A stretch of DNA of 64,000 nt, from positions 1 to 64,000 of IMG/VR virus record IMGVR_UViG_3300042558_004148, one strand, 5' to 3'. A model generated the notes under the pieces. That model saw only the letters and a list, made by a program, of their open reading frames with translations, searched no databases and was not told the DNA's origin. Made by a program: the position numbers and the translations under genes. The stretch's first letter is position 1, and each line of letters starts with the position of its first letter. Below, piece by piece: positions 1 through 40,095 of the stretch.

Positions 1-2
1 CT

Positions 3-848
3 TCAGGTACTGATGGAACTTCAGGTACCGATGGAACAAGCGGAACAAGTGGTACCGATGGAACTTCTGGAACAAGTGGTACTGATGGAACTTCTGGAAC
101 AAGTGGTACTGATGGAACTTCAGGTACTGATGGAACAAGCGGAACTTCAGGTACTGATGGAACTTCTGGAACAAGTGGTACTGACGGAACAAGCGGAACA
201 AGTGGTACCGATGGAACTTCTGGAACAAGTGGTACTGATGGAACAAGTGGTACTGATGGAACAAGTGGTACTGATGGAACAAGCGGAACAAGTGGTACCG
301 ATGGAACTTCTGGAACAAGTGGTACTGATGGAACAAGTGGTACCAATGGAACTTCTGGAACATCAGGTACTGATGGAACAAGCGGAACAAGTGGTACTGA
401 TGGAACTTCTGGAACAAGTGGTACTGATGGAACTTCTGGAACAAGTGGTACTGATGGAACTTCAGGTACCGATGGAACAAGTGGTACCGATGGAACTTCT
501 GGAACAAGTGGTACTAATGGAACTTCTGGAACAAGTGGTACTGATGGAACCTCAGGAACTGATGGAACATCTGGAACCTCAGGAACTGATGGAACCTCAG
601 GAACTGATGGAACAAGTGGTACTGATGGAACAAGTGGTACTGATGGAACAAGTGGTACTGATGGAACAAGTGGTACTGATGGAACAAGTGGTACTGATGG
701 AACAAGTGGTACCGATGGAACAAGTGGTACCGATGGAACAAGTGGTACTAACGGTACATCGGGAACTGATGGAACTAATGGAACATCAGGTACTAACGGA
801 TCTTCAGGTACTAACGGAACATCAGGAACAGCTGGAACTAGCGGCGTA
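3..848 (+). repeat. Collagen-like Gly-X-Y block 1 (GTS/GTD-dominated)
   Basis: Tandem GGAACTTCA/GGTACTGAT/GGAACAAGT 9-mers encoding GTS-GTD; GTN appears only from about 745. Confidence 0.95.
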
Positions 849-3800
849 GATGGAATATCATCAGGTCAAATATATTTTTTCAATGAAAGTATTAATTCGG
901 ACGTTTCAGGTTACAAAGAATTAAGTTTAAATCCAACATCTACGGGTCAAGTAACGGTAACTACAAATTTAACAGGTAGTCAAACTGGTGCTTTAGTTCA
1001 AGATTTTATGACACCTGAATTAGGATTTTCAATAATACCTGGTGGTGTACAAAGATTTAAGTTATATTATTTACTACCTGCGGTAAACGCTGATGTTGAA
1101 GGGTATGTTGAAATCCAATTGGCTGATTCATCGGGGTCTTTAATGGGACCTACAATAACTTCTAATGTTAGTGCATTGCCTTATGTTGACCCAACTAATC
1201 CGGGATTACTTGAGGTTGATATAGTATTACCTACAACATCAATATCCACAACTGATAGAATGGCGATAAGACTTTATCTTAATAATTTAGATTCGACAAG
1301 TCGTAGTGTTGTATTTTATACTGAAGGTAATGCTAACTATTCATATATAATAACATCAGTTGGTCAAATCGCTGGTACATCAGGAACTTCAGGTACTAAC
1401 GGATCATCGGGATCAAACGGAACTTCAGGTACTAACGGTACTGACGGAACATCGGGAACTAATGGAACTTCAGGTACTAACGGTACTAATGGAACATCAG
1501 GTACTAACGGAACTAATGGAACTTCAGGTACTAACGGAACTAGTGGAACGGATGGTACGTCAGGAACTAATGGTACGTCAGGTACAAACGGAACCAATGG
1601 AACATCAGGAACCAATGGAACATCAGGAACCAATGGAACATCAGGAACAAACGGAACCAATGGTACCTCAGGTACTGACGGAACTTCAGGGACTGATGGA
1701 GGTAATTTAACAGCATCTAATTACGTTGCTAAAGGAGTTAAAGGAGGTACCATTCAAACAATAACAAATGGAAGTGACCAAGTTGTAACATTTGTTGATG
1801 AGTTTGACCCTAATGGTTGGATAACATCCAATAAATTCCAACCAAACATTGAAGGGTATTATATTATTCAAGTTTCGGTATGGTGGTATCCTGCGTCAAC
1901 AGTATCAGGGCAAAATAATATCCAACTTAGAAAAAATGGTAGTACACAAGTTGCGATTCAACAATTTCCACTTGTTACTACTGAAGGGTACGGTCAAGAA
2001 ATTGATATTATAGTATATTTTAATGGTTCTACTGATTATATCGAGGTTACTGCTTACACCTCTAATCCAACATCGCAAGACATACACGGTGAGAGTTCAG
2101 GTACTTGGATTACCGGATCATTAGTTGTTGGTGGCGGAACTTCAGGTACTGATGGAACTTCAGGTACTAATGGAACCAACGGAACATCAGGAACCAATGG
2201 AACCAATGGAACCAATGGTACTTCAGGTACTGACGGAACTTCAGGAACCAATGGAACATCAGGTACTAACGGAACATCAGGTACTAATGGATCCTCAGGA
2301 ACCAATGGAACATCAGGTACTAACGGTACTAACGGAACCTCAGGTACTAATGGATCCTCAGGAACCAATGGAACATCGGGTACTAACGGTACTGACGGAA
2401 CATCAGGTACTAACGGAACCTCAGGTACTAATGGATCCTCAGGTACTAACGGTACTGACGGAACATCAGGAGCCAATGGAACTTCAGGTACTAACGGTAC
2501 TAACGGAACCTCAGGTACTAACGGAACATCAGGTACTAACGGAACATCAGGAACTAACGGAACATCGGGTACTAACGGTACCAATGGAACATCAGGTACT
2601 AATGGATCCTCAGGTACTAACGGAACATCAGGAACCAATGGAACATCAGGTACTAACGGTACTAATGGAACATCAGGTACTAATGGAACATCAGGAACCA
2701 ATGGAACATCAGGAACCAATGGTACTGACGGAACATCAGGAACCAATGGAACATCAGGTACTAATGGATCCTCAGGTACTAACGGTACTAATGGAACATC
2801 AGGTACTAATGGAACATCAGGAACTAATGGAACCAACGGAACATCAGGTACTAATGGATCCTCAGGAACCAATGGAACATCAGGTACTAACGGTACTAAT
2901 GGAACATCTGGTACTAATGGATCCTCAGGAACCAATGGAACATCAGGTACTAACGGTACTAATGGAACATCTGGTACTAATGGATCCTCAGGAACCAATG
3001 GATCCTCAGGAACCAATGGAACATCAGGTACTAATGGAACCAACGGAACATCGGGTACTAATGGATCCTCAGGAACTAATGGAACATCAGGTACTAATGG
3101 AACCAACGGAACATCGGGTACTAATGGATCCTCAGGAACTAATGGAACATCAGGTACTAACGGTACTAATGGAACATCAGGAACCAACGGAACTAATGGA
3201 ACTTCAGGTACTAATGGAACTTCAGGTACTAATGGAACTTCAGGAACCAATGGAACTTCAGGAACTAACGGAACCAATGGAACTTCAGGAACCAATGGAA
3301 CATCAGGTACTAATGGAACTTCAGGAACCAATGGAACCAATGGAACTTCAGGTACTAACGGAACTTCAGGAACTAATGGAACCTCAGGAACCAACGGAAC
3401 TAATGGAACTTCAGGAACCAACGGAACTAATGGAACTTCAGGAACCAATGGAACTTCAGGAACCAATGGAACTAATGGAACCTCGGGTACTAACGGAACT
3501 TCGGGAACCAATGGAACCAATGGAACTTCAGGTACTAACGGAACTTCGGGAACCAATGGAACCAATGGAACTTCAGGTACTAACGGAACTTCAGGAACTA
3601 ATGGAACCTCAGGAACCAACGGAACTAATGGAACTTCAGGAACCAACGGAACCAATGGAACTTCAGGTGCTAACGGAACTTCAGGTACTAACGGTACTAA
3701 TGGATCTTCAGGTACTAATGGAACATCGGGTGTAAGCGGATTAAACGGTACTAATGGAACATCAGGTACTAATGGTACTAACGGAACATCGGGTACTAAC

Positions 3801-5582
3801 GGAACATCGGGTACTAACGGAACATCGGGTACTAACGGAACTAATGGAACTTCAGGAACTAATGGGACATCAGGTACTAACGGTACTAATGGAACTTCAG
3901 GAACTAATGGGACATCAGGTACTAACGGTACTAATGGAACTTCAGGAACCAATGGGACATCAGGTACTAATGGAACTTCAGGTACTAATGGAACTTCAGG
4001 TACTAATGGAACTTCAGGTACTAATGGAACATCAGGTATCAATGGTGTAGATGGTGCATCTGGAACATCGGGAACTAATGGAACTAATGGAACTTCAGGT
4101 ACTAACGGTAGTCCAGGTAGTCCAGGTAGCCCAGGAACATCTGGTACTAACGGTACTAACGGAACCTCAGGTACTAATGGAACTTCAGGTACTAACGGTA
4201 GTCCAGGTAGTCCAGGTAGCCCAGGAACATCAGGTACTAATGGTACTTCAGGTACTAGTAGTGGTGGTGCAGCTGCAGTTATTGTATTAGGTGGCGGTAT
4301 TTGTTCATCAATTAGATGTGGTGCGAATAACCAGGCAACTGCAAATTACAGTGCAGCCCTAAGCGGTAGATGCAATTCTTCAGGAGCTGCTTTTTCAGTA
4401 ATCAGTGGAGGTTGCTATAATCGAACAACTAACCTATCCTGTAATTCAGTAATCGGTGGAGGCCTTGTTAACTATATTAGCTCCTGTTATTCAACAATTG
4501 GTGGTGGTTGTCTTAACAGAGTTTGTATTCCAAGAGCTACCATTTCGGGAGGGTTATGTAACCTTATAACTGGTGCTTGCTCAACTATTGGTGGTGGATT
4601 TGATAATTCCATAGCTAGTCGTAGGGCAACTATCGGTGGAGGTAATACCAATAGTGCTGCAGGTGATTCAGATCTTGCAACAATTGGTGGTGGATGTGGA
4701 AATGAGATAGGTAGTTGTGGTATAGCTGCTGTGATTTCAGGAGGATATCAAAATTCCGTGGACGCTGGTTATTCAGCAATCGGAGGGGGAGCTTCAAATC
4801 AGATTGGTTCTGCTAGCCATAAATTTATCGGAGGAGGAAAGGGCAACTTTGTAACTAAAAACACAGGATGCTCCTCAGTTGTTGGAGGACAGGATAATGC
4901 CATTGATGGTGATGCCATAAGATCATTTATTGGAGGTGGATATGGAAATATTATCACTGGTTATGCTTGTCTTAGTTCGATCGCTGGTGGAAGGCAGAAT
5001 GCAATATATCAGGGTGCTTGCCATTCTTTTATCGGGGGCGGAAGATATCATAAAATTCGAAGTGGTTCATGTTATAGCTCCATAGGAGGTGGTTTTAATA
5101 ATGATACAGCAGGTTGCTATAATGTGCATATGTTAGGAAGTAATCTTACTGCTAATCAAAATAACGCAACATTTGTCCAATATATTGTTAAAACTGGTGG
5201 TGGTACTTTTAGTATTGACCACCCAAACCCTAAATTAAGTGATGAATTGAGATTAAATCACTCTTTTGTTGAATCACCAACAGCAGGGGATAATATTTAT
5301 AGATTTAATATTGTAGTTGTTAACGGGGAAGCAATAATTGACTTACCAGATTATTTCAAATATCTAAATAAAGACGCTCAAGTTTGGATAACACCTAAAA
5401 ATGGATTTGGAATTGCTTATGGTGTTATAGACGACACGTATTCAAAGATAACAATTAAGGCAAATCTTGATATAGAATATGATGTACTTGTTATAGGTAC
5501 AAGGAAAGATAAGAATACTAAATTCTGGAAAGGCGCTGAAACACCACAACCCAAAAGAACTGAAACCCCGCAATCAGAATAA
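3..5582 (+). CDS. Giant collagen-like tail or virion fibre protein, 5'-truncated by the window edge (at least about 1,860 aa)
   Basis: Frame 3 is open from base 3 through the listed ATG at 1008 (...GTSGVDGISSGQIYFFNESINSDVSGYKELSLNPTSTG...VQDF-MTPELG), so 1008 is an internal Met. Order: three G-T-[S/D/N] triplet blocks separated by globular domains, a GG beta-roll repeat, then a C-terminal FSIDHP...HSFVESP...IDLPDYF domain of the kind seen at phage fibre ends. Confidence 0.85.
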   Translation, partial: SGTDGTSGTDGTSGTSGTDGTSGTSGTDGTSGTSGTDGTSGTDGTSGTSGTDGTSGTSGTDGTSGTSGTDGTSGTSGTDGTSGTDGTSGTDGTSGTSGTDGTSGTSGTDGTSGTNGTSGTSGTDGTSGTSGTDGTSGTSGTDGTSGTSGTDGTSGTDGTSGTDGTSGTSGTNGTSGTSGTDGTSGTDGTSGTSGTDGTSGTDGTSGTDGTSGTDGTSGTDGTSGTDGTSGTDGTSGTDGTSGTDGTSGTNGTSGTDGTNGTSGTNGSSGTNGTSGTAGTSGVDGISSGQIYFFNESINSDVSGYKELSLNPTSTGQVTVTTNLTGSQTGALVQDFMTPELGFSIIPGGVQRFKLYYLLPAVNADVEGYVEIQLADSSGSLMGPTITSNVSALPYVDPTNPGLLEVDIVLPTTSISTTDRMAIRLYLNNLDSTSRSVVFYTEGNANYSYIITSVGQIAGTSGTSGTNGSSGSNGTSGTNGTDGTSGTNGTSGTNGTNGTSGTNGTNGTSGTNGTSGTDGTSGTNGTSGTNGTNGTSGTNGTSGTNGTSGTNGTNGTSGTDGTSGTDGGNLTASNYVAKGVKGGTIQTITNGSDQVVTFVDEFDPNGWITSNKFQPNIEGYYIIQVSVWWYPASTVSGQNNIQLRKNGSTQVAIQQFPLVTTEGYGQEIDIIVYFNGSTDYIEVTAYTSNPTSQDIHGESSGTWITGSLVVGGGTSGTDGTSGTNGTNGTSGTNGTNGTNGTSGTDGTSGTNGTSGTNGTSGTNGSSGTNGTSGTNGTNGTSGTNGSSGTNGTSGTNGTDGTSGTNGTSGTNGSSGTNGTDGTSGANGTSGTNGTNGTSGTNGTSGTNGTSGTNGTSGTNGTNGTSGTNGSSGTNGTSGTNGTSGTNGTNGTSGTNGTSGTNGTSGTNGTDGTSGTNGTSGTNGSSGTNGTNGTSGTNGTSGTNGTNGTSGTNGSSGTNGTSGTNGTNGTSGTNGSSGTNGTSGTNGTNGTSGTNGSSGTNGSSGTNGTSGTNGTNGTSGTNGSSGTNGTSGTNGTNGTSGTNGSSGTNGTSGTNGTNGTSGTNGTNGTSGTNGTSGTNGTSGTNGTSGTNGTNGTSGTNGTSGTNGTSGTNGTNGTSGTNGTSGTNGTSGTNGTNGTSGTNGTNGTSGTNGTSGTNGTNGTSGTNGTSGTNGTNGTSGTNGTSGTNGTNGTSGTNGTSGTNGTSGTNGTNGTSGTNGTNGTSGANGTSGTNGTNGSSGTNGTSGVSGLNGTNGTSGTNGTNGTSGTNGTSGTNGTSGTNGTNGTSGTNGTSGTNGTNGTSGTNGTSGTNGTNGTSGTNGTSGTNGTSGTNGTSGTNGTSGTNGTSGINGVDGASGTSGTNGTNGTSGTNGSPGSPGSPGTSGTNGTNGTSGTNGTSGTNGSPGSPGSPGTSGTNGTSGTSSGGAAAVIVLGGGICSSIRCGANNQATANYSAALSGRCNSSGAAFSVISGGCYNRTTNLSCNSVIGGGLVNYISSCYSTIGGGCLNRVCIPRATISGGLCNLITGACSTIGGGFDNSIASRRATIGGGNTNSAAGDSDLATIGGGCGNEIGSCGIAAVISGGYQNSVDAGYSAIGGGASNQIGSASHKFIGGGKGNFVTKNTGCSSVVGGQDNAIDGDAIRSFIGGGYGNIITGYACLSSIAGGRQNAIYQGACHSFIGGGRYHKIRSGSCYSSIGGGFNNDTAGCYNVHMLGSNLTANQNNATFVQYIVKTGGGTFSIDHPNPKLSDELRLNHSFVESPTAGDNIYRFNIVVVNGEAIIDLPDYFKYLNKDAQVWITPKNGFGIAYGVIDDTYSKITIKANLDIEYDVLVIGTRKDKNTKFWKGAETPQPKRTETPQSE
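1374..1700 (+). repeat. Collagen-like Gly-X-Y block 2 (GTS/GTN)
   Basis: GTSGTSGTNGSSGSNGTSGTNGTD... in the fibre frame. Confidence 0.95.
1713..2127 (+). other. C1q/TNF-like (BclA C-terminal-like) trimerisation domain inside the fibre
   Basis: Beta-rich ~140 aa between collagen blocks with the pattern F-x-P-x3-GYY-x-I...IQLRKNG...IVYFNGSTDYIEV...TWITGSLV, typical of C1q-like jelly rolls. Confidence 0.65.
2136..4259 (+). repeat. Collagen-like Gly-X-Y block 3 (~700 aa, GTS/GTN, two GSP inserts)
   Basis: About 2.1 kb of near-uninterrupted Gly every third residue; GSPGSPGSPG occurs twice near 4110 and 4200. Confidence 0.95.
4350..5115 (+). repeat. Cys-rich ~15-17 aa GG beta-roll repeats (adhesin-head-like)
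   Basis: About 15 repeats of [SA]-[TVF]-I-[GS]-G-G-x2-N, e.g. SVISGGCYN, STIGGGCLN, ATISGGLCN, SFIGGGYGN. Confidence 0.8.
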
Positions 5583-5589
5583 ATAATTT

Positions 5590-5617
5590 GAAATTTTTTT
5601 CATCAATCGCAGTATAA
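5590..5617 (+). promoter_or_regulatory. Candidate middle (ECF-type) promoter GAAAT-N18-TATAA
   Basis: Same motif and spacing recur upstream of several non-structural genes (34335, 41476, 45611, 46543, 59518). Confidence 0.45.
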
Positions 5618-5634
5618 TAATAAAAACATCTCGA

Positions 5635-6456
5635 TTGATGAAAAAAATAATATTCAACTCATCATTACCTAGATCTGGATCAACACTTTGGCAAAATATA
5701 ATTGCACAAAATCCTGATTTCTATTGCACTCCCACTTCGGGACTTGCTGACATGGTGCTTTCCTCCAAGAACGCTTATAATAATTCGCAAGCTGTTTTAG
5801 CTCAGGATCCGGAGGTCATGAAGAAAGCTTTCATAGGATATTGTATGGCAGGAATTCAGGGATATTTTAATGACATAACGGACAAACCATTTGTACTCGA
5901 AAAAAGTAGGGAATGGGGAGTAAATTACGGACTTCTTAATATGCTCCAGCACGAACCCAAGGTTGTCTGTATGGTTAGGGATCTTAGATCCGTATATTCA
6001 TCAATGGAGAAGAATTTTAGAAAAAACCCACATCGCGAGAATCATGTGCAGAATGTTCCGGAATTGGTCGGTACAACTCTCAGAAAAAGAATAGATATTT
6101 GGGCTGATGGTGTACCTGTTGGTGTTTCTGTTGATAGATTGAGAGATATAATAGATCAGGGAATAGATAAAAATATACTTTTTATTAGATACGAGGACCT
6201 TATGAGCGATCCAGAATCAGAGGTTAAAAGATTCTACGACTATATAGGGATTGACTATTATCCAGGACATAATTTTAAAACAATCGAGCAGGTAACACAT
6301 GAAAATGATTTAATTCATGGAATATACGGTGATCATAAATTAAGAACCGAATTTAAAAGACTACCTGATGATTATGAGGAGATATTAGGATTTGAGCTTT
6401 CTCAGGCAATCAAGAATACCTATGGATGGTTCTATGATTATTTTGAATATGTGTAA
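5635..6456 (+). CDS. PAPS-dependent sulfotransferase
   Basis: N-terminal 5'-PSB loop SSLPRSGSTL; 3'-PB-like MVRDLRSVYSS; IRYEDL motif. Confidence 0.85.
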   Translation: MMKKIIFNSSLPRSGSTLWQNIIAQNPDFYCTPTSGLADMVLSSKNAYNNSQAVLAQDPEVMKKAFIGYCMAGIQGYFNDITDKPFVLEKSREWGVNYGLLNMLQHEPKVVCMVRDLRSVYSSMEKNFRKNPHRENHVQNVPELVGTTLRKRIDIWADGVPVGVSVDRLRDIIDQGIDKNILFIRYEDLMSDPESEVKRFYDYIGIDYYPGHNFKTIEQVTHENDLIHGIYGDHKLRTEFKRLPDDYEEILGFELSQAIKNTYGWFYDYFEYV

Positions 6457-6485
6457 TAAATAATCGATAATTAATTTTTATAATA

Positions 6486-6935
6486 ATGGCAATTTATATA
6501 CTAACCGGTCAACCTCATTCAGGAAAAACAACCCTCGCTAATCATTTAAAAAATTCTTTGGATAAATCTTTCGTTATAGATGGTGACGATCTGAGGGAAA
6601 TACTGAATAATAAGGATTATTCTGAAGCGGGAAGAAGAAAGAACATAGAGACAGCTCATTCGATAGCTAAATACTTATCTAGGCAGGACGTTAATAACAA
6701 TATAATAATATCATTGGTTAGCCCGTATAAAGATCTTAGAGACAGTCTAAAATGCGAAAATGGAGCTGTCGAATTTTATATACATACTTCTGAAATAAGG
6801 GGAAGAGAATCTTTTCATGTAGCAGAATATCAAAAACCTACTGAAGATTTTACTGATATTGACACTACTGGAATATCAGAAACTGAATCACTAAAACAAA
6901 TATTATGGAAAATTGGTCAAAAAAAGTCCATGTAA
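6486..6935 (+). CDS. cysC: Adenylyl-sulfate (APS) kinase, compact form
   Basis: P-loop LTGQPHSGKTT; IDGDDLR; RRKNI; SLVSPY; YQKP. Confidence 0.85.
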   Translation: MAIYILTGQPHSGKTTLANHLKNSLDKSFVIDGDDLREILNNKDYSEAGRRKNIETAHSIAKYLSRQDVNNNIIISLVSPYKDLRDSLKCENGAVEFYIHTSEIRGRESFHVAEYQKPTEDFTDIDTTGISETESLKQILWKIGQKKSM

Positions 6936-7309
6936 AATCATCACTGCAGCCTAAAGATAGTCAATATGCTATGTTTATTGGTAGATGGCAACCACTTCAT
7001 CCAGGTCACAAAGCTATGTTTCAACAAGCTATAAACGATGGTAAGAAGGTATTAATTGCAATCAGAGATATTGAGCCAGATGAAAAAAATCCTTGGACTC
7101 CCAACGAAGTTATGCTTAATATACATTCCGAGATTAGAGATCTAGTTAGTGAAAGGCTAGCAAAGATCATAATAATTCCAGATATATGCTCAGTTGAATT
7201 TGGTAGAGGTGTTGGTTACGATATAATCGAACATATCCCACCAACTGAAATAGCCAATATATCAGCAACTGCGGTTAGAGAGGAATTAAGGAAAGAAGGA
7301 AAATTATAA
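6905..7309 (+). CDS. HxGH (cytidylyltransferase-like) nucleotidyltransferase
   Basis: FIGRWQPLHPGH and ISATAVR signature motifs; overlaps the APS kinase by 31 nt in the -1 frame. Confidence 0.8.
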   Translation: MENWSKKVHVKSSLQPKDSQYAMFIGRWQPLHPGHKAMFQQAINDGKKVLIAIRDIEPDEKNPWTPNEVMLNIHSEIRDLVSERLAKIIIIPDICSVEFGRGVGYDIIEHIPPTEIANISATAVREELRKEGKL

Positions 7310-7563
7310 TGGAAACTAATCAGGAAATTCTAAAAAAGTCAGATAGAAAAGAAAATAGATCTAATATGATAAGACACATATTAAAAACACTTTCTTATAG
7401 AATATTAGGCACGATGACAACTGTAATTACTGCATATATGTTAGGAGCTTCGGTAGAATTAGCATCATTACTAGGTATGGGAGAGATTGTTTTCAAGCCT
7501 ATTATATATTTTTTGCATGAGAGAATTTGGTATAAATTCATCAGGATAGGATCAAAAAAATAA
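7309..7563 (+). CDS. DUF2061-like small membrane protein
   Basis: RHILKTLSYRILGT...IYFLHERIW pattern with two hydrophobic stretches; ATG overlaps the upstream stop. Confidence 0.75.
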   Translation: METNQEILKKSDRKENRSNMIRHILKTLSYRILGTMTTVITAYMLGASVELASLLGMGEIVFKPIIYFLHERIWYKFIRIGSKK

Positions 7564-7567
7564 GCAC

Positions 7568-8443
7568 ATGAATATAATATTGGAGGTTTCTGGTGGATTG
7601 GGTAAAAGCTTTATGTCCACCGCTGTAGTAAAAGCTTTACGTAAACAGTATACTAGAGATAACATAATAGTGGTAACATCATATCCCGATGTTTTTAAAG
7701 GTAATAATAATGTTAATAGAATTATTACCCACGCAAATGCGGGTCCAATTTATAGGGATTTTATTAACAACAAGGAAGCTAAAGTATTTATTACCGATCC
7801 ATACACAACCTCCGATTTTATAACGGAAAAAAAACATCTTATCGAGATATGGTGCGATTTGTGTGGTGTCCCTTATGATGGGGAACTGCCTGAATTATTT
7901 ATAAGTAAATCTGAAAGACAATATTATGAGCAGTTTTATAAATTAGATAAGCCTATAATGGCTATACATCCGAATGGTGGAAGCATAGAGCAACCTCTAA
8001 AATATAGCTGGACCCGAGATATTCCGCAACCAATAATTGAGAATATTATAGAGCACTATAAAGATGATTATTCCGTGGTACATATAAGAAGGGAAGATCA
8101 ATTTCAATATGATAACACAATTTCTGCATTGGATAATTTTAGAAGCATTGCAATTATGCTGACCCTTTCAGAAAAAAGACTTCTTATAGACTCATCTGCG
8201 ATGCATATAGCATCTTCCCTGGGTTTACCGTCAACAGTTGCCTGGATCGGAACAAATCCCAAAGTTTTTGGCTATAATATACATGATAATATAATTGCTA
8301 ATCCACATACGGAAAAGCACGATATATCGAATAATTACTATCAGAAATATATGTTATTTGAGGATATCAGTAGAATACCATATTCCGATATGAATGACAT
8401 TTTTAATATTAGCGATATTATAGATAGCATAAATAAACAATAA
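7568..8443 (+). CDS. GT9-like (ADP-heptose-type) glycosyltransferase
   Basis: SGGLGK...TAVVKALRK N-terminus; LLIDSSAMHIASSLGLPSTVAW C-terminal GT-B motif. Confidence 0.7.
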   Translation: MNIILEVSGGLGKSFMSTAVVKALRKQYTRDNIIVVTSYPDVFKGNNNVNRIITHANAGPIYRDFINNKEAKVFITDPYTTSDFITEKKHLIEIWCDLCGVPYDGELPELFISKSERQYYEQFYKLDKPIMAIHPNGGSIEQPLKYSWTRDIPQPIIENIIEHYKDDYSVVHIRREDQFQYDNTISALDNFRSIAIMLTLSEKRLLIDSSAMHIASSLGLPSTVAWIGTNPKVFGYNIHDNIIANPHTEKHDISNNYYQKYMLFEDISRIPYSDMNDIFNISDIIDSINKQ

Positions 8444-8454
8444 AAATAAAAAAT

Positions 8455-8730: not shown

Positions 8731-8736
8731 TTCCTT

Positions 8737-9669
8737 ATGAAGAAACTCTGTATAGATATAAGCGAGGCTAGAGCTATTGGCGATACATTATGTGTATCGC
8801 CAGTTTTGCGTAAACTATATTACTCATATGGTAGAAAAATATCTATAATAACTCATCATACAGATATATTTAGAAATAATCCATATGTTGATTCTCTATA
8901 TCTTCCTGGTGATCTTGATTTGGATGATGATTTCGAAATATTTAGAACTTTCGATGTAAACTATAAATCCGATGGCATATGCAATAAGCATAATACTATT
9001 GACATTAGGCAGTTCCATGCAATTAGCCTTGGATTCATGTTAAATCAGGAGGAACTTACTTTGGATTTTTTCCCTTCTGATTTTGAAGAAATACAGGGAC
9101 TTCCCGATAGATACGTTCTTATACATCCCGTACAAAACTGGGAATCCAGAACATGGGATAGAGAAAAATGGATTCTATTAGTCAGAGCTTTGAATGCGGG
9201 CGGAATAAGTGTGGTTTCTGTCGGAAAGGAGTCATCCGAAATGGGTGGATCCAATGTTCAAAAGCCAACCTTTAATTTTGATATTGAATTGGGTATGAAT
9301 TTACAGAACAAAACATCATTATCTCAGACGTGGTGGCTGATTGAAAAAAGTGAATGCTTCGTTACTATGGATTCTGGTCTTCTACATTTAGCAGGTACTA
9401 CCGATTCTGAAATAATTCAATTAGGCAGTTCAATAGATAATAAGTTTAGAGCACCATATAGAAAGGGATCTCAGGAATATAAATACCATTATGTTTCTGG
9501 TGGATGTAATTTGAAATGTGCGTCTGATATAAAATATGGTGTAAGAGAATGGAACACGATACAGGGAATACCTTCGTTGGTCGGATGTCTGGAGGGAAAG
9601 AAAACTTTCGAATGCCATCCAAGCGTAATGAGTGTTTATAATAAAATAATGTCCACTGTTAATAAATAA
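8737..9669 (+). CDS. GT9-family glycosyltransferase with C-terminal Cys cluster
   Basis: AIGDTLCVSPVLRKL; FVTMDSGLLHLAG; C-x3-C...C-x8-C near the C-terminus. Confidence 0.8.
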   Translation: MKKLCIDISEARAIGDTLCVSPVLRKLYYSYGRKISIITHHTDIFRNNPYVDSLYLPGDLDLDDDFEIFRTFDVNYKSDGICNKHNTIDIRQFHAISLGFMLNQEELTLDFFPSDFEEIQGLPDRYVLIHPVQNWESRTWDREKWILLVRALNAGGISVVSVGKESSEMGGSNVQKPTFNFDIELGMNLQNKTSLSQTWWLIEKSECFVTMDSGLLHLAGTTDSEIIQLGSSIDNKFRAPYRKGSQEYKYHYVSGGCNLKCASDIKYGVREWNTIQGIPSLVGCLEGKKTFECHPSVMSVYNKIMSTVNK

Positions 9670-9677
9670 GTATCCGG

Positions 9678-10607
9678 ATGGGTAATAAAATAATATTGAT
9701 TAGTTCATATTGCGATAATGAGGAAAAGATTAGTGTATTAGAATCTAATATAAGAACACTAAAAAATCTCGGTCTGGATGTTATGCTTAATAGTCCTATT
9801 GATATACCAAATAGGGTCTCCTCATTATGCGATTATTATATAAGAACTAAAGATAATCCGATTATCGACTGGCCAATTAAATCGGTATCGGTTTGGTCTG
9901 AATATCGATGTAAAGGGAAGAAAATAATTATGAATAGATGTCTACCTGATTACGGATGGGCAAATATCCATCAGGTAAAAAAATTATCAGAATATGCATT
10001 AACGTATGATTATGAATATTTCTACCATATAATATATGATATAAAAATTGACGATACCGTTTTGAGTGGTATACTATCCGATGCGGAATGTAATTTCTAT
10101 CATTTCCATGAGCATTGGGTAAGTCTACATTTTATGCTATTTGATAGGAAAAACTTAGTATCATTTATATCTGGATTAAATATAAATGAATATATTGAAT
10201 TTTGTGGAATTGCTGAAACCTGGCTAAAAAACTACCTGGAGAATTCAGATTTGCCGTATAAAGTGGATGATTGTTATGTTGATGACCATATACTTTTTCA
10301 TAATGGAGTAGATCTTTTTAATTATTCGGGATTTTCTGAATTTAGGTATTTCATAGCTAAAAATGCTATGGAAAATAATTCTATTAAAATTTATTTCTAT
10401 GGTGTTAAAAATCATATTGATTTAAAAATCCACCTTAATTCAACCACAAAAATATACGAAATAGCTGATAGAGATATAATAGATCTTGAATTATCTCGCG
10501 ATGACATGATATCTGTCATAATTGAATATAACGGATTAACCGAAGATATAACTGAAAAAATAAGATCCATAACACACAATAATATTAATTTATATGAAGA
10601 GAATTAA
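9678..10607 (+). CDS. Hypothetical protein in the glycosylation cluster
   Basis: 309-aa ORF overlapping the next gene; no confident family. Confidence 0.6.
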   Translation: MGNKIILISSYCDNEEKISVLESNIRTLKNLGLDVMLNSPIDIPNRVSSLCDYYIRTKDNPIIDWPIKSVSVWSEYRCKGKKIIMNRCLPDYGWANIHQVKKLSEYALTYDYEYFYHIIYDIKIDDTVLSGILSDAECNFYHFHEHWVSLHFMLFDRKNLVSFISGLNINEYIEFCGIAETWLKNYLENSDLPYKVDDCYVDDHILFHNGVDLFNYSGFSEFRYFIAKNAMENNSIKIYFYGVKNHIDLKIHLNSTTKIYEIADRDIIDLELSRDDMISVIIEYNGLTEDITEKIRSITHNNINLYEEN

Positions 10608-13473
10608 ACTATTATATTTAACCCCACATCTATCAACCGGTGGAATGCCTCAGTTCGCACTGAAGAGAATACAGAAACTTAATGAATATAGTGATGAGAT
10701 AGAAATCTTTGTTGTCGAGTACTCCAAATTTAGTGATACCTATGTTGTCCAAAGAAATTCAATACTTGAAATGATTGACAGTGATCATTTCTTTACACTG
10801 GGGGATACATCCGATACTAGAAGAAAATATGAGATAATTCAGATAATTAAGGATAATGATATAGATTTAGTTCATTCAGAGGAAATATTAGAGGGATTTG
10901 AAAGTTTTAATAAGATCCCTGCTGATTTAATTAACATGTTATATTCCGATGATAGAAGCTGGAGAATGATTGAAACCTGTCATAATATTTGGTTTGATCC
11001 GAAAGAATTTAAAAAATTAAAACCTGATGCATATTCATTAATTTCACCACATCATACGGAAAAAACATTCGCATCTGAGTCCTCATATAAGGAGCTTCAT
11101 CTATATCCATATGAGAATAAAACAGATATAAGAATAAAAAATAGGAAGAATTCTATCAAAAAACTGGGATTTGATAGAAATAAGAAAAACGTTCTCAATG
11201 TTGGATTATGGACTAGTGGAAAGAATCAGGGAGAGGGAATAGAAATTGCTAGATTCATAGAATCATCTAGTCCTGATGTATTTTTTCATTTTGTAGGTAA
11301 TTTAGCTCCAAATTTCGAAAATTACTGGGGAGATATAACAAAGAATCTACCAAGCAATGTTAAGATATGGGGGGAGCGTGACGATGTTGATGAATTCATG
11401 ATAGCATGTGACGCCATGATGTTTAATTCTACCTGGGAATGCAATCCTTTAGTTATAAGAGAAGCCATAGGATATGGCATGAAGATATTAGCCAGAAATC
11501 TACCGCAATATTATAACATGTATGATGGATACATCACTCCGATAGAGGGTGATATAAAAGAAATATCGGGACGACTTATTGATATGCTTGAATCTGATAT
11601 TGAATATCAGGTACCTGATGATTCTAATTTTGGTAGGACATTATTGGATTTCTATAGGAAGGTAATGGAGATAGAAATAACACCACAGCCTAAAATAGAA
11701 AATGACTACGAGTTTATACAACATTTTGTTGGTCAGCCCTATTTCGAATTAAGAGGCAGTAGTAGTAATAAATTTAAGGTGGAATTCTCTGATGGTGGAA
11801 AAATTATACATTCGGATCTCCTAAATTTTAATAGCTGGTCGAAATTAAACAGAAAATATTATACCAAATGGGACACAACGGTATATGAAAATGGTGAAAT
11901 AATATATAAGAATTCATTAGATCTTAGGGACAGAAGAGTTTATATTGCATTTGGATCTAAATCTCTAGGTGATACTCTTGCGTGGATACCTTACATGGAG
12001 GAATTTAGAAAAATTCATAATTGCGAATTGATAGTTTCTACGTTCATTAATCACTTATTCATTGAACAGTATCCCAATATTACTTTTGTCAATCCAGGGG
12101 AAACTGTAAATAATTTATATGCCCAATATAATATTGGATGGTATTATGACAGTAACGGAAATATTGATTATAATAAGGTTCCAAACGACTTTAGAAAACA
12201 ACCTTTACAGAAGACAGCCACTGATATACTCGGTCTCGAATATAAGGAAATAAAGCCTCGTTTAAATTTACCTAACGTGAAAAAAAAGAAAAAAGTTGGG
12301 ATAGGATTTCATTCAACTGCTCAGGCCAAATACTGGAACAATCCTAACGGATGGCAAGAGGTAATTGATCATCTTAATTCGATTGGTTATGAATGCATGA
12401 TATATTCCAGAGAGGGAGACGGATATATGAATAATGCATATCCAAAAAATGTTGATGTGTTTAAAGGCGGAAATCTACAGGATGTAATAAATGATCTGTG
12501 TGAGTGTGAATTTTTCATTGGCTTGGGCTCTGGATTAAGTTGGCTAGCTTGGTCATGTAAATTACCAATCATTTTGATTTCTGGATTTAGTGAAAGATTT
12601 TCTGAAACTTCATCCGACACATATAGAATTATTAACGAGGATGTTTGCCACGGATGCTTTAATTCGGAAATGCTAGATGCTGGAGATTGGAATTGGTGTC
12701 CATTACATAAAAATTCGGAGAGAATGTTTGAGTGTACAAAACAAATTAATTCTAATATGGTTACCAAGGAAATAGATAGATTAATTGGGGAAAATCACAT
12801 ACCAAATTTTGATTGGGGTTGGATGAACGATGGTAGTTCTAATGGTAATTATCACAAGAAACTTATGTATAATGAGATATTTGAGCAAAAAATATATGAG
12901 AGATTCTTTGAAGTTGATCATTCCGATATTGTATTGGATGTTGGTTCTAGCGTCGGCCCATTCACATATTCGATATTAAAGAAAAATCCTAAACATGTAT
13001 TTTGTATAGAACCTAGTGAGAGTGAATTTACTACACTAGTTAAAAATACATTAGGTAATCCGGTTACTCATATAAATAAGGGATTATCAGATATAAATGG
13101 AGTTATCGAATATGATCAATTATTTGGAGGAGAAACACATATGGAATCCATTACCTTTGATAAGCTCGTTAAATTATACGGTCTGAATAGGATAGATTTC
13201 ATGAAAACTGATTGTGAGGGCGGTGAATATGAGATTTTTAAGAAAGATAATCTTGACTTTATTAAAAAAAATATAAAGAAGATTGCCGGCGAATGGCATT
13301 TAATGAGTAAAGAAAATAAAGAAAAATTCAGGGATTTCCGGGATAATATATTAATAGAGTTCGATCGATATGAGGTATTATCATTAGATGGTATTGATAT
13401 AAAATGGGATCTATGGAACGAACATTTTATAGAGTATTATAATGAGGTCCTTATATACATAGATAATAGATAG
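10594..13473 (+). CDS. Three-domain enzyme: GT4 glycosyltransferase + Aah/TibC-type (BAHT) protein O-heptosyltransferase + FkbM-family methyltransferase
   Basis: GT4: PHLSTGGMPQ, GERDDV, ECNPLVIREA. BAHT: RVYIAFGSKSLGDTLAWIPY and the iron-finger VCHGCFN...WNWCPLHK...FECTKQI. FkbM: VLDVGSSVGPF, IDFMKTDCEGGEY. Confidence 0.8.
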   Translation: MKRIKLLYLTPHLSTGGMPQFALKRIQKLNEYSDEIEIFVVEYSKFSDTYVVQRNSILEMIDSDHFFTLGDTSDTRRKYEIIQIIKDNDIDLVHSEEILEGFESFNKIPADLINMLYSDDRSWRMIETCHNIWFDPKEFKKLKPDAYSLISPHHTEKTFASESSYKELHLYPYENKTDIRIKNRKNSIKKLGFDRNKKNVLNVGLWTSGKNQGEGIEIARFIESSSPDVFFHFVGNLAPNFENYWGDITKNLPSNVKIWGERDDVDEFMIACDAMMFNSTWECNPLVIREAIGYGMKILARNLPQYYNMYDGYITPIEGDIKEISGRLIDMLESDIEYQVPDDSNFGRTLLDFYRKVMEIEITPQPKIENDYEFIQHFVGQPYFELRGSSSNKFKVEFSDGGKIIHSDLLNFNSWSKLNRKYYTKWDTTVYENGEIIYKNSLDLRDRRVYIAFGSKSLGDTLAWIPYMEEFRKIHNCELIVSTFINHLFIEQYPNITFVNPGETVNNLYAQYNIGWYYDSNGNIDYNKVPNDFRKQPLQKTATDILGLEYKEIKPRLNLPNVKKKKKVGIGFHSTAQAKYWNNPNGWQEVIDHLNSIGYECMIYSREGDGYMNNAYPKNVDVFKGGNLQDVINDLCECEFFIGLGSGLSWLAWSCKLPIILISGFSERFSETSSDTYRIINEDVCHGCFNSEMLDAGDWNWCPLHKNSERMFECTKQINSNMVTKEIDRLIGENHIPNFDWGWMNDGSSNGNYHKKLMYNEIFEQKIYERFFEVDHSDIVLDVGSSVGPFTYSILKKNPKHVFCIEPSESEFTTLVKNTLGNPVTHINKGLSDINGVIEYDQLFGGETHMESITFDKLVKLYGLNRIDFMKTDCEGGEYEIFKKDNLDFIKKNIKKIAGEWHLMSKENKEKFRDFRDNILIEFDRYEVLSLDGIDIKWDLWNEHFIEYYNEVLIYIDNR

Positions 13474-39126: not shown

Positions 39127-40095
39127 TTGGATTTATTAGATAAATTTAGATCTGTTAGAATATTGATTGTTGGCGATGTGATGCTGGATCATTATGTCCA
39201 TGGTAGCGTTACAAGAATCTCACCGGAGGCACCTGTCCCTATATTGGATGTAATACGCTCTGAATATTATTTGGGCGGATCTGGTAATATTTTACGTAAT
39301 ATAAAATCGATGGGAGGTAATGCTGATATAATTACTACGGTTGGCGATGATATTCACGGAAATACTATAAAAAATCTAGTAGCTGAATACAGCGACAATT
39401 CATTTATTTTTGAAGATTCTACCAGAAGAACAACACTAAAATCAAGATACATTTCAGGATCAAATCATCAATTATTTAGAGTCGATGACGAAAACCGTAA
39501 TTATATTGACTCGTTAACAGAAGAAATTATAATTTCTAGATTTAACGAGATGTACATTAATTATGATTGCGTTTTAATTGAGGATTATAATAAAGGTCTT
39601 TTGACACCAGCTATGATATCTAATATAATATCAAAATGTAATATTTCTGGTATTCCAGCTATAGCAGACCCCAAGATTTTAAATATTCCTAGTTATTCAG
39701 GTTGTAGCTTACTCAAGCCAAATCTATCTGAATTTTCTAACATGACTGGATTTAATGGTTCTAATTTGGATCTAATTAGTATAGAGCAGCATGCTAGGAA
39801 ATTTATATCCGATAATGATATTGATTCAATATTGGTAACCTTATCAGAAAGAGGATTAATCTATATCAACAAGGATGAATCCGTTTATGATCCTGGATAT
39901 CCAATGGATGTATATGATGTTTCGGGAGCGGGAGACACTGTTATATCGATTTTATCATTATGCATGGTAAGTAATATAGGGATCAGGGAATCATTATCGA
40001 TTTGTAATATAGCTGCTTCCATAGCTTGTTCTAAATCAGGAACTGTTGCTGTCGATATTAATGATATTTTAAATTCAAAATTTTATACATTCTAA
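39127..40095 (+). CDS. rfaE: D-glycero-D-manno-heptose-7-phosphate kinase (RfaE/HldE domain I, PfkB family)
   Basis: ILIVGDVMLDHY-x2-GSVTRISPEAPVP, EDYNKG, DVSGAGDT signature motifs. Confidence 0.9.
   Translation: MDLLDKFRSVRILIVGDVMLDHYVHGSVTRISPEAPVPILDVIRSEYYLGGSGNILRNIKSMGGNADIITTVGDDIHGNTIKNLVAEYSDNSFIFEDSTRRTTLKSRYISGSNHQLFRVDDENRNYIDSLTEEIIISRFNEMYINYDCVLIEDYNKGLLTPAMISNIISKCNISGIPAIADPKILNIPSYSGCSLLKPNLSEFSNMTGFNGSNLDLISIEQHARKFISDNDIDSILVTLSERGLIYINKDESVYDPGYPMDVYDVSGAGDTVISILSLCMVSNIGIRESLSICNIAASIACSKSGTVAVDINDILNSKFYTF

What the first reader, a model, noticed from the sequence alone, without database searches (positions are those of the whole stretch)
4285..5130. Cys-rich GG beta-roll tip whose S-x-I-S/G-GG repeats resemble the BAHT acceptor motif
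Seen: about 15 repeats (SVISGG, ATISGG, AVISGG, STIGGG...) with about 17 Cys in ~290 aa, which is high for a cytoplasmically folded phage protein. Established: Aah/TibC modify Ser in the strand-loop-strand V-x-(N)-S-G-G-type repeats of AIDA-I/TibA. Inference: this adhesin-like head may be the cognate substrate of the adjacent BAHT, and the Cys may form inter-chain disulfides after lysis or bind metal.
Basis: partly seen in the sequence, partly recalled or inferred. Interest (0 to 1): 0.6.

Follow-up and report, generated by a model that had tools for sequence, protein, structure and literature searches.

The report
Cysteine-rich adhesin-like tip of phage fibre
The flagged stretch is the cysteine-rich, three-chain "head" at the far end of a giant collagen-like fibre of a jumbo phage, built like the heads of bacterial trimeric adhesins. 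The neighbouring sugar-adding enzyme is real, but it tracks the collagen-like stalk rather than this tip.

Summary
Window 4285-5130 encodes 16 rungs of a 15-17-residue S-x-I-G/S-G-G-x-x-N repeat. It carries 17 Cys in 283 aa (6.0% against 0.84% genome-wide), and the rest of the 1,859-aa frame read in the window, like the 882-aa N-terminal piece at the contig end, has none.

The fold is not AIDA-like. It is a UspA1-type "GGG" left-handed beta-roll, as in trimeric-autotransporter heads (PDB 3PR7: E 5e-17, Z 21.1). It caps a collagen-like fibre of about 2,740 aa or more and is followed by a roughly 125-aa knob.

A trimer model scores 0.95 against a best control of 0.08.

The adjacent BAHT is genuine. 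It scores 273 bits on TIGR04414 (cut-off 200), and the catalytic Asp and four iron-finger Cys are kept. The phage also carries GmhA- and HldE-like genes.

Across 33 non-redundant tip loci, BAHT co-occurs with collagen-like triplets (17 with both, 13 with neither, 3 mixed). Of 39 BAHT lineages, 22-23 sit beside collagen-like ORFs and only 3 beside GGG repeats.

The tip itself travels with a divergent GT9-like gene (31/33) and a sulfotransferase (25/33).

Cys-richness is family-wide, but the role of the Cys is not resolved; disulfide stapling is the working guess.

The parts
3..4259 (+). Collagen-like stalk of the giant fibre gene. There are three G-X-Y blocks (6-860, 1374-1706, 2136-4259), 1,104 aa in the window, mostly GTS, GTN and GTD triplets, with 191 Ser and 337 Thr. 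Two non-collagen inserts interrupt them. The gene starts at genome 370838 and runs across the contig break.
4285..5130 (+). Cys-rich GGG head: 16 rungs of a 15-17-residue S-x-I-G/S-G-G-x-x-N-x-I repeat with 17 Cys. It is a UspA1-type left-handed parallel beta-roll, predicted to be a homotrimer.
5131..5582 (+). Cap of the roll followed by a ~125-aa beta-rich C-terminal knob with an invariant H-S-F-V-E-S-P core. The knob is shared with P-SSM2 and S-TIM5 fibre-like or virion proteins and with 94 of the 120 best metagenome relatives. The stop codon is included.
5635..6456 (+). Sulfotransferase (Pfam Sulfotransfer_3 and Sulfotransfer_1). A homologue is present in 25 of 33 non-redundant GGG-tip loci, often directly downstream of the tip gene.
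6486..6935 (+). APS-kinase-like P-loop kinase, part of the cassette that travels with the tip (23/33 loci).
6905..7309 (+). Small nucleotidyltransferase (CTP_transf_like) of unassigned specificity, part of the same cassette.
7309..7563 (+). 84-aa ORF of unknown function, conserved in the cassette (31 loci).
7568..8443 (+). Divergent GT9-like (GT-B) protein and the gene most tightly linked to GGG tips (31/33 loci). An invariant G-G-L-G-K aligns on the L-G-D of BAHT, so the catalytic Asp position is a Lys.
8737..9669 (+). GT9 heptosyltransferase-family protein (Pfam PF01075, E 1.4e-13).
10594..13473 (+). 959-aa three-domain enzyme. It combines GT4 (aa 184-336), a TibC/Aah-type BAHT (aa 402-730) and an FkbM methyltransferase (aa ~751-917).
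39127..40095 (+). HldE domain-I-like heptose-7-phosphate kinase (TIGR02198, E 6e-90, below cut-off). With the GmhA-like gene (genome 118722-119126) and the HldE domain-II-like gene (genome 317253-317645, minus strand), it suggests the phage makes its own nucleotide-heptose.

Best explanation
Window 4285-5130 encodes the distal head of a giant trimeric collagen-like fibre (about 2,740 aa or more) of a 373-kb jumbo phage. The head is a homotrimeric UspA1-type GGG left-handed beta-roll of 16 rungs, capped by a small C-terminal knob, and most likely serves as the receptor-binding, adhesin-like end of the fibre. The S-x-I-G-G-G motif is the structural signature of this fold. In the model the Ser/Thr strand of one chain packs on the G-G-G turn of the next chain, so it is not an exposed acceptor loop. 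The Cys occupy variable positions next to that interface (-4/-3, +4/+5, +9 to +11), at about one per rung across the whole phage subfamily. The most likely reading (inferred) is that they form inter-rung or inter-chain disulfide staples once the virion reaches oxic water. The neighbouring BAHT fusion (GT4-BAHT-FkbM) is probably active, using heptose activated by phage-encoded GmhA/HldE-like enzymes. Its cognate substrate is most likely the Ser/Thr-rich collagen-like stalk (inferred from co-occurrence) rather than the tip. The tip co-inherits with a different cassette: a GT9-like gene, a sulfotransferase, a kinase and a nucleotidyltransferase. Shown: repeat, Cys bias, sequence and fold similarity, BAHT membership, gene co-occurrence. 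Predicted by a model: the trimer and the interface location of the Ser. Inferred: disulfides, stalk heptosylation, receptor binding.
For: Fold: phmmer to UspA1 head 3PR7 gives E 5.3e-17. The AF2 model has pLDDT 77, above 85 over most rungs. VIA-align gives 3PR7 Z 21.1 at 33% identity over 232 residues, BpaC head Z 19.3 and CbpF Z 16.8. UspA1 is the TAA head with 15-residue layers and an extra conserved Gly (PMC9543794). Trimer: ipSAE 0.95 against best control 0.08, partner pLDDT 91, at least 96% contact agreement; the mark was reached by 20 of 30 solved pairs and 1 of 23 single chains. The upstream collagen triple helix also implies a trimer. Interface: positions -3..-1 and +1..+4 of every rung, holding 14 of 14 motif Ser. 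BAHT real; D110, K230, W305 and the 4 Cys are invariant in 38 phage homologues. Heptose genes. Co-occurrence from the tip side (33 non-redundant loci): collagen and BAHT 17, collagen only 2, BAHT only 1 (fibre ORF cut at the locus edge), neither 13; Fisher p 2e-6. From the BAHT side (39 lineages): 22-23 have a collagen-like ORF within 10 kb, often 63-600 bp away and with many different C-terminal domains, while only 3 have GGG repeats. Cys-richness is family-wide: about 1 Cys per rung in six IMG/VR relatives and a median of 3.3% in 120 metagenome relatives.
Against: No experiment supports any step, and I had no model coordinates, so no Cys-Cys distance could be measured. The trimer score may partly reflect memory of solved TAA heads. 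Modification before trimerisation is not excluded, since TibC modifies free peptides in vitro (PMC4358343). The co-occurrence counts are not phylogenetically corrected and only see +/-10 kb. Individual Cys columns are poorly conserved (mostly below 50% in A1), which sits awkwardly with a fixed disulfide framework, though repeat alignments are unreliable. There are 17 Cys per chain, an odd number. No sulfhydryl oxidase was found, but that search had no positive control. The phage BAHTs lack sugar-binding Arg-286 (V/L/T), so the donor may not be ADP-heptose.
Confidence: 0.62

Rival explanations
1. One reading: the S-x-I-S/G-G-G rungs of the tip are the acceptor sites of the adjacent BAHT, as the V-x-N-S-G-G repeats of AIDA-I and TibA are for Aah and TibC.
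For: A true BAHT domain lies 5 kb downstream in the same transcriptional direction. There is a local strand-Gly turn-strand resemblance, and 3 rungs carry I-S-G-G with Ser directly before G-G, as at TibA S313 (PMC4358343). TibC can modify unfolded peptides, so an interface location does not strictly forbid modification.
Against: 13 of 33 tip lineages have no BAHT within 10 kb, and BAHT presence follows collagen triplets. 36 of 39 BAHT lineages have no GGG repeats nearby. Ser at the TibA-equivalent position (+1) is found in only 0-23% of rungs across relatives. All motif Ser sit in the predicted trimer interface, where a heptose would clash. The same motif occurs in the UspA1 head, where I know of no BAHT partner (my own knowledge, not tested).
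Confidence: 0.07
2. The tip is modified by its own cassette rather than by BAHT. The GT9-like protein (7568-8443) and/or the sulfotransferase (5635-6456) would decorate exposed residues on the outer face of the roll or on the knob. The kinase and nucleotidyltransferase would supply the donor.
For: The GT9-like gene is present in 31/33, the sulfotransferase in 25/33 and the kinase in 23/33 non-redundant GGG-tip loci, usually directly downstream. Loci with only the C-terminal knob mostly lack them. GT9 kinship: 12/30 members hit PF01075 (best 3e-5); hhalign to the BAHT profile gives E 4e-5 at 69% probability; atlas features agree. 15 Ser lie outside the interface.
Against: The evidence is guilt by association only. 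The catalytic Asp position is an invariant Lys, so the protein may not be a transferase and could be an assembly factor. No ATP-sulfurylase is found in the genome. The fold of the GT9-like protein could not be modelled (pLDDT 40).
Confidence: 0.35
3. The glycosyltransferase and heptose genes act on the host envelope (LPS or O-antigen remodelling, superinfection exclusion) and merely sit in the hypervariable fibre region. The fibre would not be glycosylated at all.
For: This is the published reading for glycosyltransferases and rfaE in the tail-fibre hypervariable region of pelagimyophages (PMC7029224). GT9 enzymes are classically LPS heptosyltransferases.
Against: The TibC/Aah family is defined by protein O-heptosylation, and the domain passes its equivalog cut-off. 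The tight coupling of BAHT to the presence of collagen-like triplets in the neighbouring gene is not expected for an LPS function.
Confidence: 0.18
4. The Cys are metal ligands or reactive free thiols (for example for covalent or redox-dependent adhesion) rather than disulfide staples.
For: There is an odd number of Cys (17). Cys positions drift among relatives while density is kept. The virion is assembled in a reducing cytoplasm, and no thiol oxidase was detected (weak test).
Against: There are no CxxC or His/Cys clusters typical of metal sites. Cys stack at the same rung position in consecutive rungs (-4 in rungs 3-4 and 14-17; +4/+5 in rungs 2, 4, 5), a geometry compatible with ladder or inter-chain disulfides. 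More distant relatives have no Cys and keep the fold.
Confidence: 0.12

Closest known systems
UspA1 head of Moraxella catarrhalis (PDB 3PR7), the 15-residue 'GGG' left-handed parallel beta-roll of trimeric autotransporter adhesins (also BpaC, CbpF, YadA heads)
   Same: It has the same repeat (Y/x-S-T-I-G-G-G-x-x-N-x-A-x-G-x) with a 15-residue period. Identity is 33% over 232 aligned residues, E 5e-17, Z 21.1. A homotrimer is predicted, and it takes the adhesin-head position at the end of a long trimeric stalk.
   Different: There is no signal peptide, neck, coiled-coil stalk or YadA-type membrane anchor. The stalk is a collagen triple helix, the C-terminus is a phage knob, and the protein is made in the cytoplasm as a virion part. 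There are 17 Cys where the aligned UspA1 repeats show none.
AIDA-I / TibA passenger domains with their BAHTs Aah / TibC
   Same: A bona fide TibC-like BAHT is encoded nearby, and the candidate substrate is a long repetitive Gly/Ser-rich adhesin-like protein. A few rungs contain S-G-G.
   Different: AIDA/TibA repeats are 19 residues, form a right-handed single-chain beta-helix and expose the acceptor Ser in loops. Here the roll is left-handed and trimeric, and the motif Ser lie in the interface. The enzyme is fused to GT4 and FkbM domains, lacks Arg-286 and is phage-encoded.
Glycosylated collagen-like surface fibres such as Bacillus anthracis BclA (my own knowledge, not tested here)
   Same: It is a long G-X-Thr/Ser collagen-like trimer ending in a globular C-terminal domain, encoded next to glycosyltransferase and methyltransferase genes.
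   Different: Thr is at the X position (G-T-S/N/D), the candidate enzyme is a BAHT heptosyltransferase rather than a rhamnosyltransferase, and the setting is a phage virion.
Phage collagen-like and GGG-repeat fibre proteins in metagenomes and in cyanophages P-SSM2 and S-TIM5
   Same: They share the C-terminal knob (27-34% identity to P-SSM2 and S-TIM5 fibre or virion proteins; 50-55% in IMG/VR relatives L089-L091) and the same head-plus-knob module.
   Different: None of these relatives carries a name or functional annotation in the sources searched. The cyanophage proteins share only the knob.

Membership tests
TAA-type left-handed parallel beta-roll head (UspA1 'GGG' subtype), as a fold module | 14-16-residue repeats with a conserved hydrophobic-Gly turn and Asn; the UspA1 subtype has 15 residues with an extra Gly | tested here: met
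   There are 16 rungs, with modal spacing of 15 and 17 and consensus S-x-I-G-G-G-x-x-N-x-I. The UspA1 layer description is in PMC9543794.
TAA-type left-handed parallel beta-roll head (UspA1 'GGG' subtype), as a fold module | Significant sequence and fold similarity to solved heads | tested here: met
   3PR7 E 5.3e-17; Z 21.1, rmsd 7.8 over 232 residues at 33% identity; BpaC Z 19.3; CbpF Z 16.8. Foldseek alone found nothing significant.
TAA-type left-handed parallel beta-roll head (UspA1 'GGG' subtype), as a fold module | Obligate homotrimer | tested here: met
   This is a prediction only: ipSAE 0.95 against best control 0.08, pLDDT 91, at least 96% contact agreement. The mark was reached by 20/30 solved pairs and 1/23 single chains, and memory of solved TAA heads may contribute.
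Trimeric autotransporter adhesin (type Vc secreted protein) | C-terminal YadA-type beta-barrel anchor, signal peptide and coiled-coil stalk | tested here: not met
   There are no Pfam hits on the C-terminal 465 aa. The C-terminus is a phage knob shared with cyanophage fibre proteins, and the stalk is collagen-like.
BAHT substrate of the AIDA-I/TibA kind | 19-residue right-handed beta-helix repeats with the acceptor Ser in an exposed loop directly before G-G | tested here: not met
   The period is 15-17 and the fold is a left-handed trimeric roll. Ser directly before G-G occurs in only 3 rungs, and all motif Ser are in the predicted interface.
BAHT substrate of the AIDA-I/TibA kind | Genetic linkage of substrate and BAHT across relatives | tested here: not met
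   13/33 tip lineages lack BAHT within 10 kb. BAHT follows collagen triplets (17/2/1/13, p 2e-6). Only 3/39 BAHT lineages sit near GGG repeats.
BAHT (TibC/Aah, NCBIfam TIGR04414), for the gene at 10594-13473 | Score above the curated equivalog cut-off | tested here: met
   273.2 bits against cut-off 200; 275.8 bits in the genome scan; TibC 4RAP E 1e-66.
BAHT (TibC/Aah, NCBIfam TIGR04414), for the gene at 10594-13473 | Catalytic base Asp-110 and sugar-binding Thr-226, Lys-230, Arg-286 and Trp-305 | tested here: inconclusive
   D, T, K and W are conserved, and D, K and W are invariant in 38 phage homologues. Arg-286 is Val here and V/L/T in 33/38. The stereoselectivity site Pro-300 is Gly here, and G or S across the family (PMC4358343).
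BAHT (TibC/Aah, NCBIfam TIGR04414), for the gene at 10594-13473 | Four-Cys iron finger | tested here: met
   The equivalents of C339, C342, C358 and C370 are all present and invariant in 38 phage homologues.
BAHT (TibC/Aah, NCBIfam TIGR04414), for the gene at 10594-13473 | Dodecameric ring; heptosyltransferase activity on a protein Ser | not testable with these tools
   This needs biochemistry. The thumb-tip residues are Y-M in place of F-V.
GT9 (heptosyltransferase) superfamily, for the ORF at 7568-8443 | Detectable profile similarity and a conserved catalytic Asp in the N-terminal G-D motif | tested here: inconclusive
   12/30 members hit PF01075 (best 3e-5; the window protein itself only 0.12). 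hhalign to the BAHT profile gives E 4e-5 at 69% probability. The Asp position is an invariant Lys.

The most novel reading that the evidence does not exclude
Phages encode a large, undescribed branch of the TibC/Aah BAHT family. It is usually fused to GT4 and FkbM domains and supplied by phage GmhA/HldE-like genes, and it O-heptosylates the Ser/Thr-rich collagen-like stalks of giant virion fibres. A second, independent cassette (GT9-like protein, sulfotransferase, kinase and nucleotidyltransferase) decorates the Cys-rich TAA-like head. If so, this fibre is a doubly modified viral glycoprotein adhesin, and BAHTs are not restricted to autotransporters.
Probability: 0.35. Interest if true: 0.78.

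Novelty: new variant of a known kind. Interest (0 to 1): 0.55.

Why it matters
BAHTs are known only as enzymes that glycosylate autotransporter virulence factors in Gram-negative pathogens. Here a full-scoring BAHT domain turns up in at least 39 phage lineages, including the cultured Microcystis phage Mel-JY01 and several huge phages. It is coupled to collagen-like fibre genes and, in this genome, to a phage-borne heptose pathway. That would extend protein O-heptosylation to virions and to a collagen-type substrate.

Separately, a bacterial adhesin-head fold (the UspA1 type) is reused as a phage fibre tip in a Cys-rich form. This raises a concrete, testable question: how does a cytoplasmically assembled virion part use about one Cys per rung? 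Both points bear on host recognition by abundant uncultured aquatic phages.

For the scan itself, the result corrects a plausible but wrong enzyme-substrate pairing.

Tried and rejected
- **Family scans of the tip:** Pfam and PHROGs found nothing on the C-terminal 465 aa.
- **DNA search:** megablast of 4200-9000 against 50,697 phage records found nothing.
- **Foldseek:** the tip model against PDB gave no hit at E <= 0.001. Only the Foldseek-independent aligner recovered the TAA heads.
- **Fold of the GT9-like ORF 7568-8443:** I submitted it as a single sequence and it failed (pLDDT 39.7). That used my last fold job; an alignment should have been supplied. The profile of that family against PDB sequences also gave nothing.
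- **Cys geometry:** model coordinates are not exposed to me, so Cys-Cys distances and solvent exposure could not be computed. I used the interface residue list instead.
- **Cys covariation:** column conservation and covariation in A1 were inconclusive, because repeat alignments are ambiguous.
- **Thiol oxidase:** the Erv1/ALR search found nothing, but its controls were also silent, so it is uninformative.
- **Other absences:** no ATP-sulfurylase, no GmhB, no psbA. An HldD-like hit is only a generic short-chain dehydrogenase-level match.
- **Cyanophage origin rejected:** the knob matches cyanophage fibres. However, the neck protein's nearest relatives are huge phages, Sphingomonas phage PAU and phages of Bacteroidota hosts.
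- **Circular join rejected:** a naive join of the contig ends is out of frame, so the repeat is probably collapsed or mis-joined there.
- **Not used:** the big representative-protein search, sequencing-run search and read mapping were not needed.


Full report
**1. What is at the coordinates**

The window is the first 64 kb of a single 373,485-bp virus contig. GC is about 33% and nearly all genes lie on the + strand.

Frame +3 is open from the window start to 5582. The gene really begins at genome position 370838 and runs off the contig end. The assembly is therefore broken inside the gene's own repeats, and the protein is about 2,740 aa or longer.

Within the window, 1,104 residues are collagen-like G-X-Y triplets, mostly GTS, GTN and GTD. 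They fall in three blocks (6-860, 1374-1706, 2136-4259) separated by two globular inserts.

The flagged stretch 4285-5130 follows directly. It holds 16 rungs of S-x-I-G/S-G-G-x-x-N-x-I, spaced mostly 15 or 17 residues apart. It has 17 Cys in 283 aa, while the rest of the protein has none. Cys is 6.0% here against 0.84% genome-wide, the highest such stretch in the genome.

A cap and a roughly 125-aa beta-rich knob end the protein at 5582.

**2. What fold it is**

Pfam and PHROGs are silent on the tip. A sequence search of solved structures hits the head of the Moraxella trimeric autotransporter adhesin UspA1 (3PR7) at E 5.3e-17, aligning rung on rung to its Y-S-T-I-G-G-G repeats.

An AlphaFold2 model built on 43 homologues has mean pLDDT 77, above 85 over most rungs. 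Foldseek found nothing significant. The exhaustive aligner gave these matches:

| Structure | Z | Note |
|---|---|---|
| UspA1 head 3PR7 | 21.1 | 33% identity, 232 residues, rmsd 7.8 |
| BpaC head | 19.3 | |
| CbpF | 16.8 | |
| Ryegrass ice-binding beta-roll | 13.3 | |

A curli subunit with 6% identity tied at Z 21.3, a generic solenoid match.

UspA1 is the TAA head with 15-residue layers and an extra conserved Gly (PMC9543794), which matches this repeat. So the tip is a left-handed, two-sheet beta-roll of the TAA-head kind. It is not the 19-residue right-handed AIDA/TibA helix.

It is also not a TAA. There is no membrane anchor, the stalk is collagen-like, and the knob is shared with fibre or virion proteins of cyanophages P-SSM2 and S-TIM5.

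**3. Trimer and the position of the motif Ser**

Three copies of residues 40-320 of the tip gave ipSAE 0.95 in all three runs. The best of three controls was 0.08, partner pLDDT was 91, and contact agreement was at least 96%. In the tool's calibration the mark was reached by 20 of 30 solved pairs and 1 of 23 single chains. Those counts hold only roughly here, because three copies and my own alignment were used, and memory of solved TAA heads may contribute.

The confident interface is strictly periodic. Positions -3, -2 and -1 of each rung, counted from the Ile, lie on one face. Positions +1 to +4, the G-G-G turn plus one residue, lie on the other.

All 11 Ser at -2 and all 3 Ser in I-S-G-G are in this interface. 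Fifteen other Ser lie outside it.

In TibA the mapped heptosylated residues are S313 in Q-N-S-G-G and S322 (PMC4358343). Only three rungs here have Ser at the S313-equivalent place. Among relatives that position is Ser in 0-23% of rungs.

The caveats are that this is a model, and that TibC can act on free peptides.

**4. The neighbouring enzyme is a real BAHT**

The 959-aa product of 10594-13473 has three parts:
- A GT4 domain.
- A TibC/Aah domain: 4RAP E about 1e-66, and NCBIfam TIGR04414 273 bits against a cut-off of 200.
- An FkbM methyltransferase domain.

The catalytic Asp-110, Thr-226, Lys-230, Trp-305 and all four iron-finger Cys are present. Across 38 phage homologues the Asp, Lys, Trp and the four Cys are invariant.

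Sugar-binding Arg-286 is Val here and V/L/T in most homologues. The stereoselectivity site Pro-300 is Gly or Ser (residue roles from PMC4358343).

The genome also encodes:
- A GmhA-like isomerase.
- An HldE domain-I-like kinase, inside the window at 39127-40095.
- An HldE domain-II-like adenylyltransferase.

All three are strong matches but fall below the equivalog cut-offs. No GmhB was found. The phage thus appears able to make its own nucleotide-activated heptose, which supports an active transferase.

**5. Which protein does the BAHT go with?**

*From the BAHT side.* The BAHT domain has 145 relatives in IMG/VR. It also occurs in Microcystis phage Mel-JY01 and in several huge phages. Collapsed at 90% identity, the best 80 IMG/VR loci, these phage records and L091 from the tip scan form 39 lineages. 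The domain stands alone (about 380 aa), is fused to GT4 (about 700 aa), or is fused to GT4 and FkbM (about 950-1,500 aa).

The commonest neighbour family is collagen-like. In 22-23 of 39 lineages there is an ORF with 20 to 850 G-T/S-S/N triplets within 10 kb. It is often only 63-600 bp away, and its C-terminal domains vary widely. Only three lineages have GGG repeats nearby.

*From the tip side.* I fetched 79 loci with the head-plus-knob profile. Of these, 40 non-redundant loci have a GGG ORF, and 33 of those have at least 7 kb downstream:

| | BAHT present | BAHT absent |
|---|---|---|
| Collagen triplets present | 17 | 2 |
| Collagen triplets absent | 1 (fibre ORF cut by the locus edge) | 13 |

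Fisher's exact test gives p 2e-6. This is not corrected for phylogeny.

BAHT therefore follows the collagen-like stalk, not the GGG head. I infer that the stalk, with 191 Ser and 337 Thr in the window part alone, is the likelier acceptor.

The published alternative is that fibre-region glycosyltransferases remodel host LPS (PMC7029224). It is not excluded, but it does not predict this coupling.

**6. What goes with the tip**

Homologues found in the 33 tip loci:

| Gene | Loci |
|---|---|
| ORF 7568-8443 | 31 |
| Sulfotransferase 5635-6456 | 25 |
| APS-kinase-like gene | 23 |
| BAHT | 18 |

Across all the loci fetched, including redundant ones, the small nucleotidyltransferase and the 84-aa ORF also recur, in 32 and 31 loci respectively. 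Loci that share only the knob mostly lack these genes.

ORF 7568-8443 has no direct family hit. Evidence for GT9 kinship is as follows:
- 12 of 30 family members reach Pfam Glyco_transf_9 (best E 3e-5).
- Language-model features point to viral GT9 clusters.
- A profile-profile comparison with the phage BAHT family gives E 4e-5 at 69% probability over 183 columns.

Its invariant G-G-L-G-K aligns on the BAHT L-G-D, so the catalytic Asp position is a Lys. It is a divergent GT9-like protein of uncertain activity. It is the best candidate for a tip-specific modifier or assembly factor, but this rests on association only.

**7. The cysteines**

Cys-richness is a property of the whole phage subfamily. 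Six IMG/VR relatives have roughly one Cys per rung, for example 54 Cys for 55 rungs. The 120 best metagenome relatives have a median of 3.3% Cys. More distant relatives keep the fold with almost no Cys.

Cys occupy the variable repeat positions. In the window they stack in consecutive rungs, at -4 in rungs 3-4 and 14-17 and at +4/+5 in rungs 2, 4 and 5. Five of the 14 modelled Cys are in the interface, and the -4 ladder flanks it.

This geometry is compatible with inter-rung or inter-chain disulfides. Three points weigh against a fixed framework:
- Individual Cys columns are poorly conserved.
- The count per chain is odd.
- I could not measure distances.

Disulfide stapling after release is my working explanation, at roughly even odds. 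Metal binding or free thiols remain possible.

**8. Verdict**

Its central inference is wrong, or at least not supported: the GGG motif is the trimer interface of a UspA1-type head, and the BAHT tracks the collagen-like stalk.

The locus remains interesting for three reasons. It reveals a large phage branch of the BAHT family linked to collagen-like fibres. It shows a phage-borne heptose pathway. And it shows a Cys-rich TAA-like tip with its own GT9-like and sulfotransferase cassette. I found no paper describing any of these.

The host is unknown. The nearest neck-protein relatives are huge phages, Sphingomonas phage PAU and phages of Bacteroidota hosts, and no psbA is present.

Noticed in passing
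window 1-290 and genome 373196-373485: The contig starts and ends inside the collagen-like repeats of one gene. The first 100 bases recur at 373196, but the next 189 bases differ at 43 positions, and a direct join is out of frame. The 'direct terminal repeats' label on this record may therefore be an artefact of the gene's internal repeats, and the repeat number is probably collapsed.
   Followed up: partly
window 39127-40095; genome 118722-119126 (+); genome 317253-317645 (-): The phage encodes an HldE domain-I-like kinase, a GmhA-like isomerase and an HldE domain-II-like adenylyltransferase, scattered over the genome. No GmhB was found. Together they form a near-complete nucleotide-heptose pathway.
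   Followed up: partly
window 5635-8443: A cassette of sulfotransferase, APS-kinase-like kinase, small nucleotidyltransferase, 84-aa ORF and GT9-like ORF is conserved next to GGG-tip genes in dozens of IMG/VR lineages, with or without BAHT. No ATP-sulfurylase is present in the genome, so the source of the sulfate donor is unclear.
   Followed up: partly
window 6-4259: The stalk triplets G-T-N-G-T-S create about 130 N-G-T sequons (N-x-S/T) and about 168 S-G dipeptides. N-linked modification was not examined.
   Followed up: no
L001 (PP395634.1, Microcystis phage Mel-JY01) 2-3052 (+): This cultured phage has a 1,016-aa open collagen-like frame (GTS/GSS triplets) cut by the record start. GenBank annotates minus-strand hypothetical ORFs over it. 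Next come a Ser-rich 'structural protein' and a 1,226-aa protein, annotated FkbM methyltransferase, whose C-terminal part is the BAHT domain (47% identity). It would make a good experimental model.
   Followed up: partly
L040, L043, L048, L050, L052, L079: Stand-alone ~380-aa phage BAHTs lie downstream of 1,845-2,470-aa ORFs that are not collagen-like (20-25% Ser+Thr). BAHT may therefore have other giant substrates in some lineages.
   Followed up: no
genome 342519-343193 and 343307-344866: There are two further, shorter collagen-like ORFs (46 triplets each) elsewhere in the genome.
   Followed up: no
window 13511-13882: A DUF6165 gene directly downstream of the BAHT fusion is conserved next to BAHT in 19 fetched loci (63-73% identity outside the window's own lineage).
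   Followed up: no
window 13959-16448: The 829-aa protein with a T4 neck-protein or head-closure domain has its nearest database relatives in huge phages (LR7565xx), Sphingomonas phage PAU, Lak phages and phages of Chryseobacterium, Tenacibaculum and Flavobacterium. This hints at a Bacteroidota host rather than a cyanobacterium.
   Followed up: partly
window 11650-12900 (BAHT domain): The phage BAHT clade replaces sugar-binding Arg-286 with V/L/T. The Pro-300/Ser-294 stereoselectivity site is Gly (21) or Ser (16), which suggests a different or relaxed donor specificity.
   Followed up: partly
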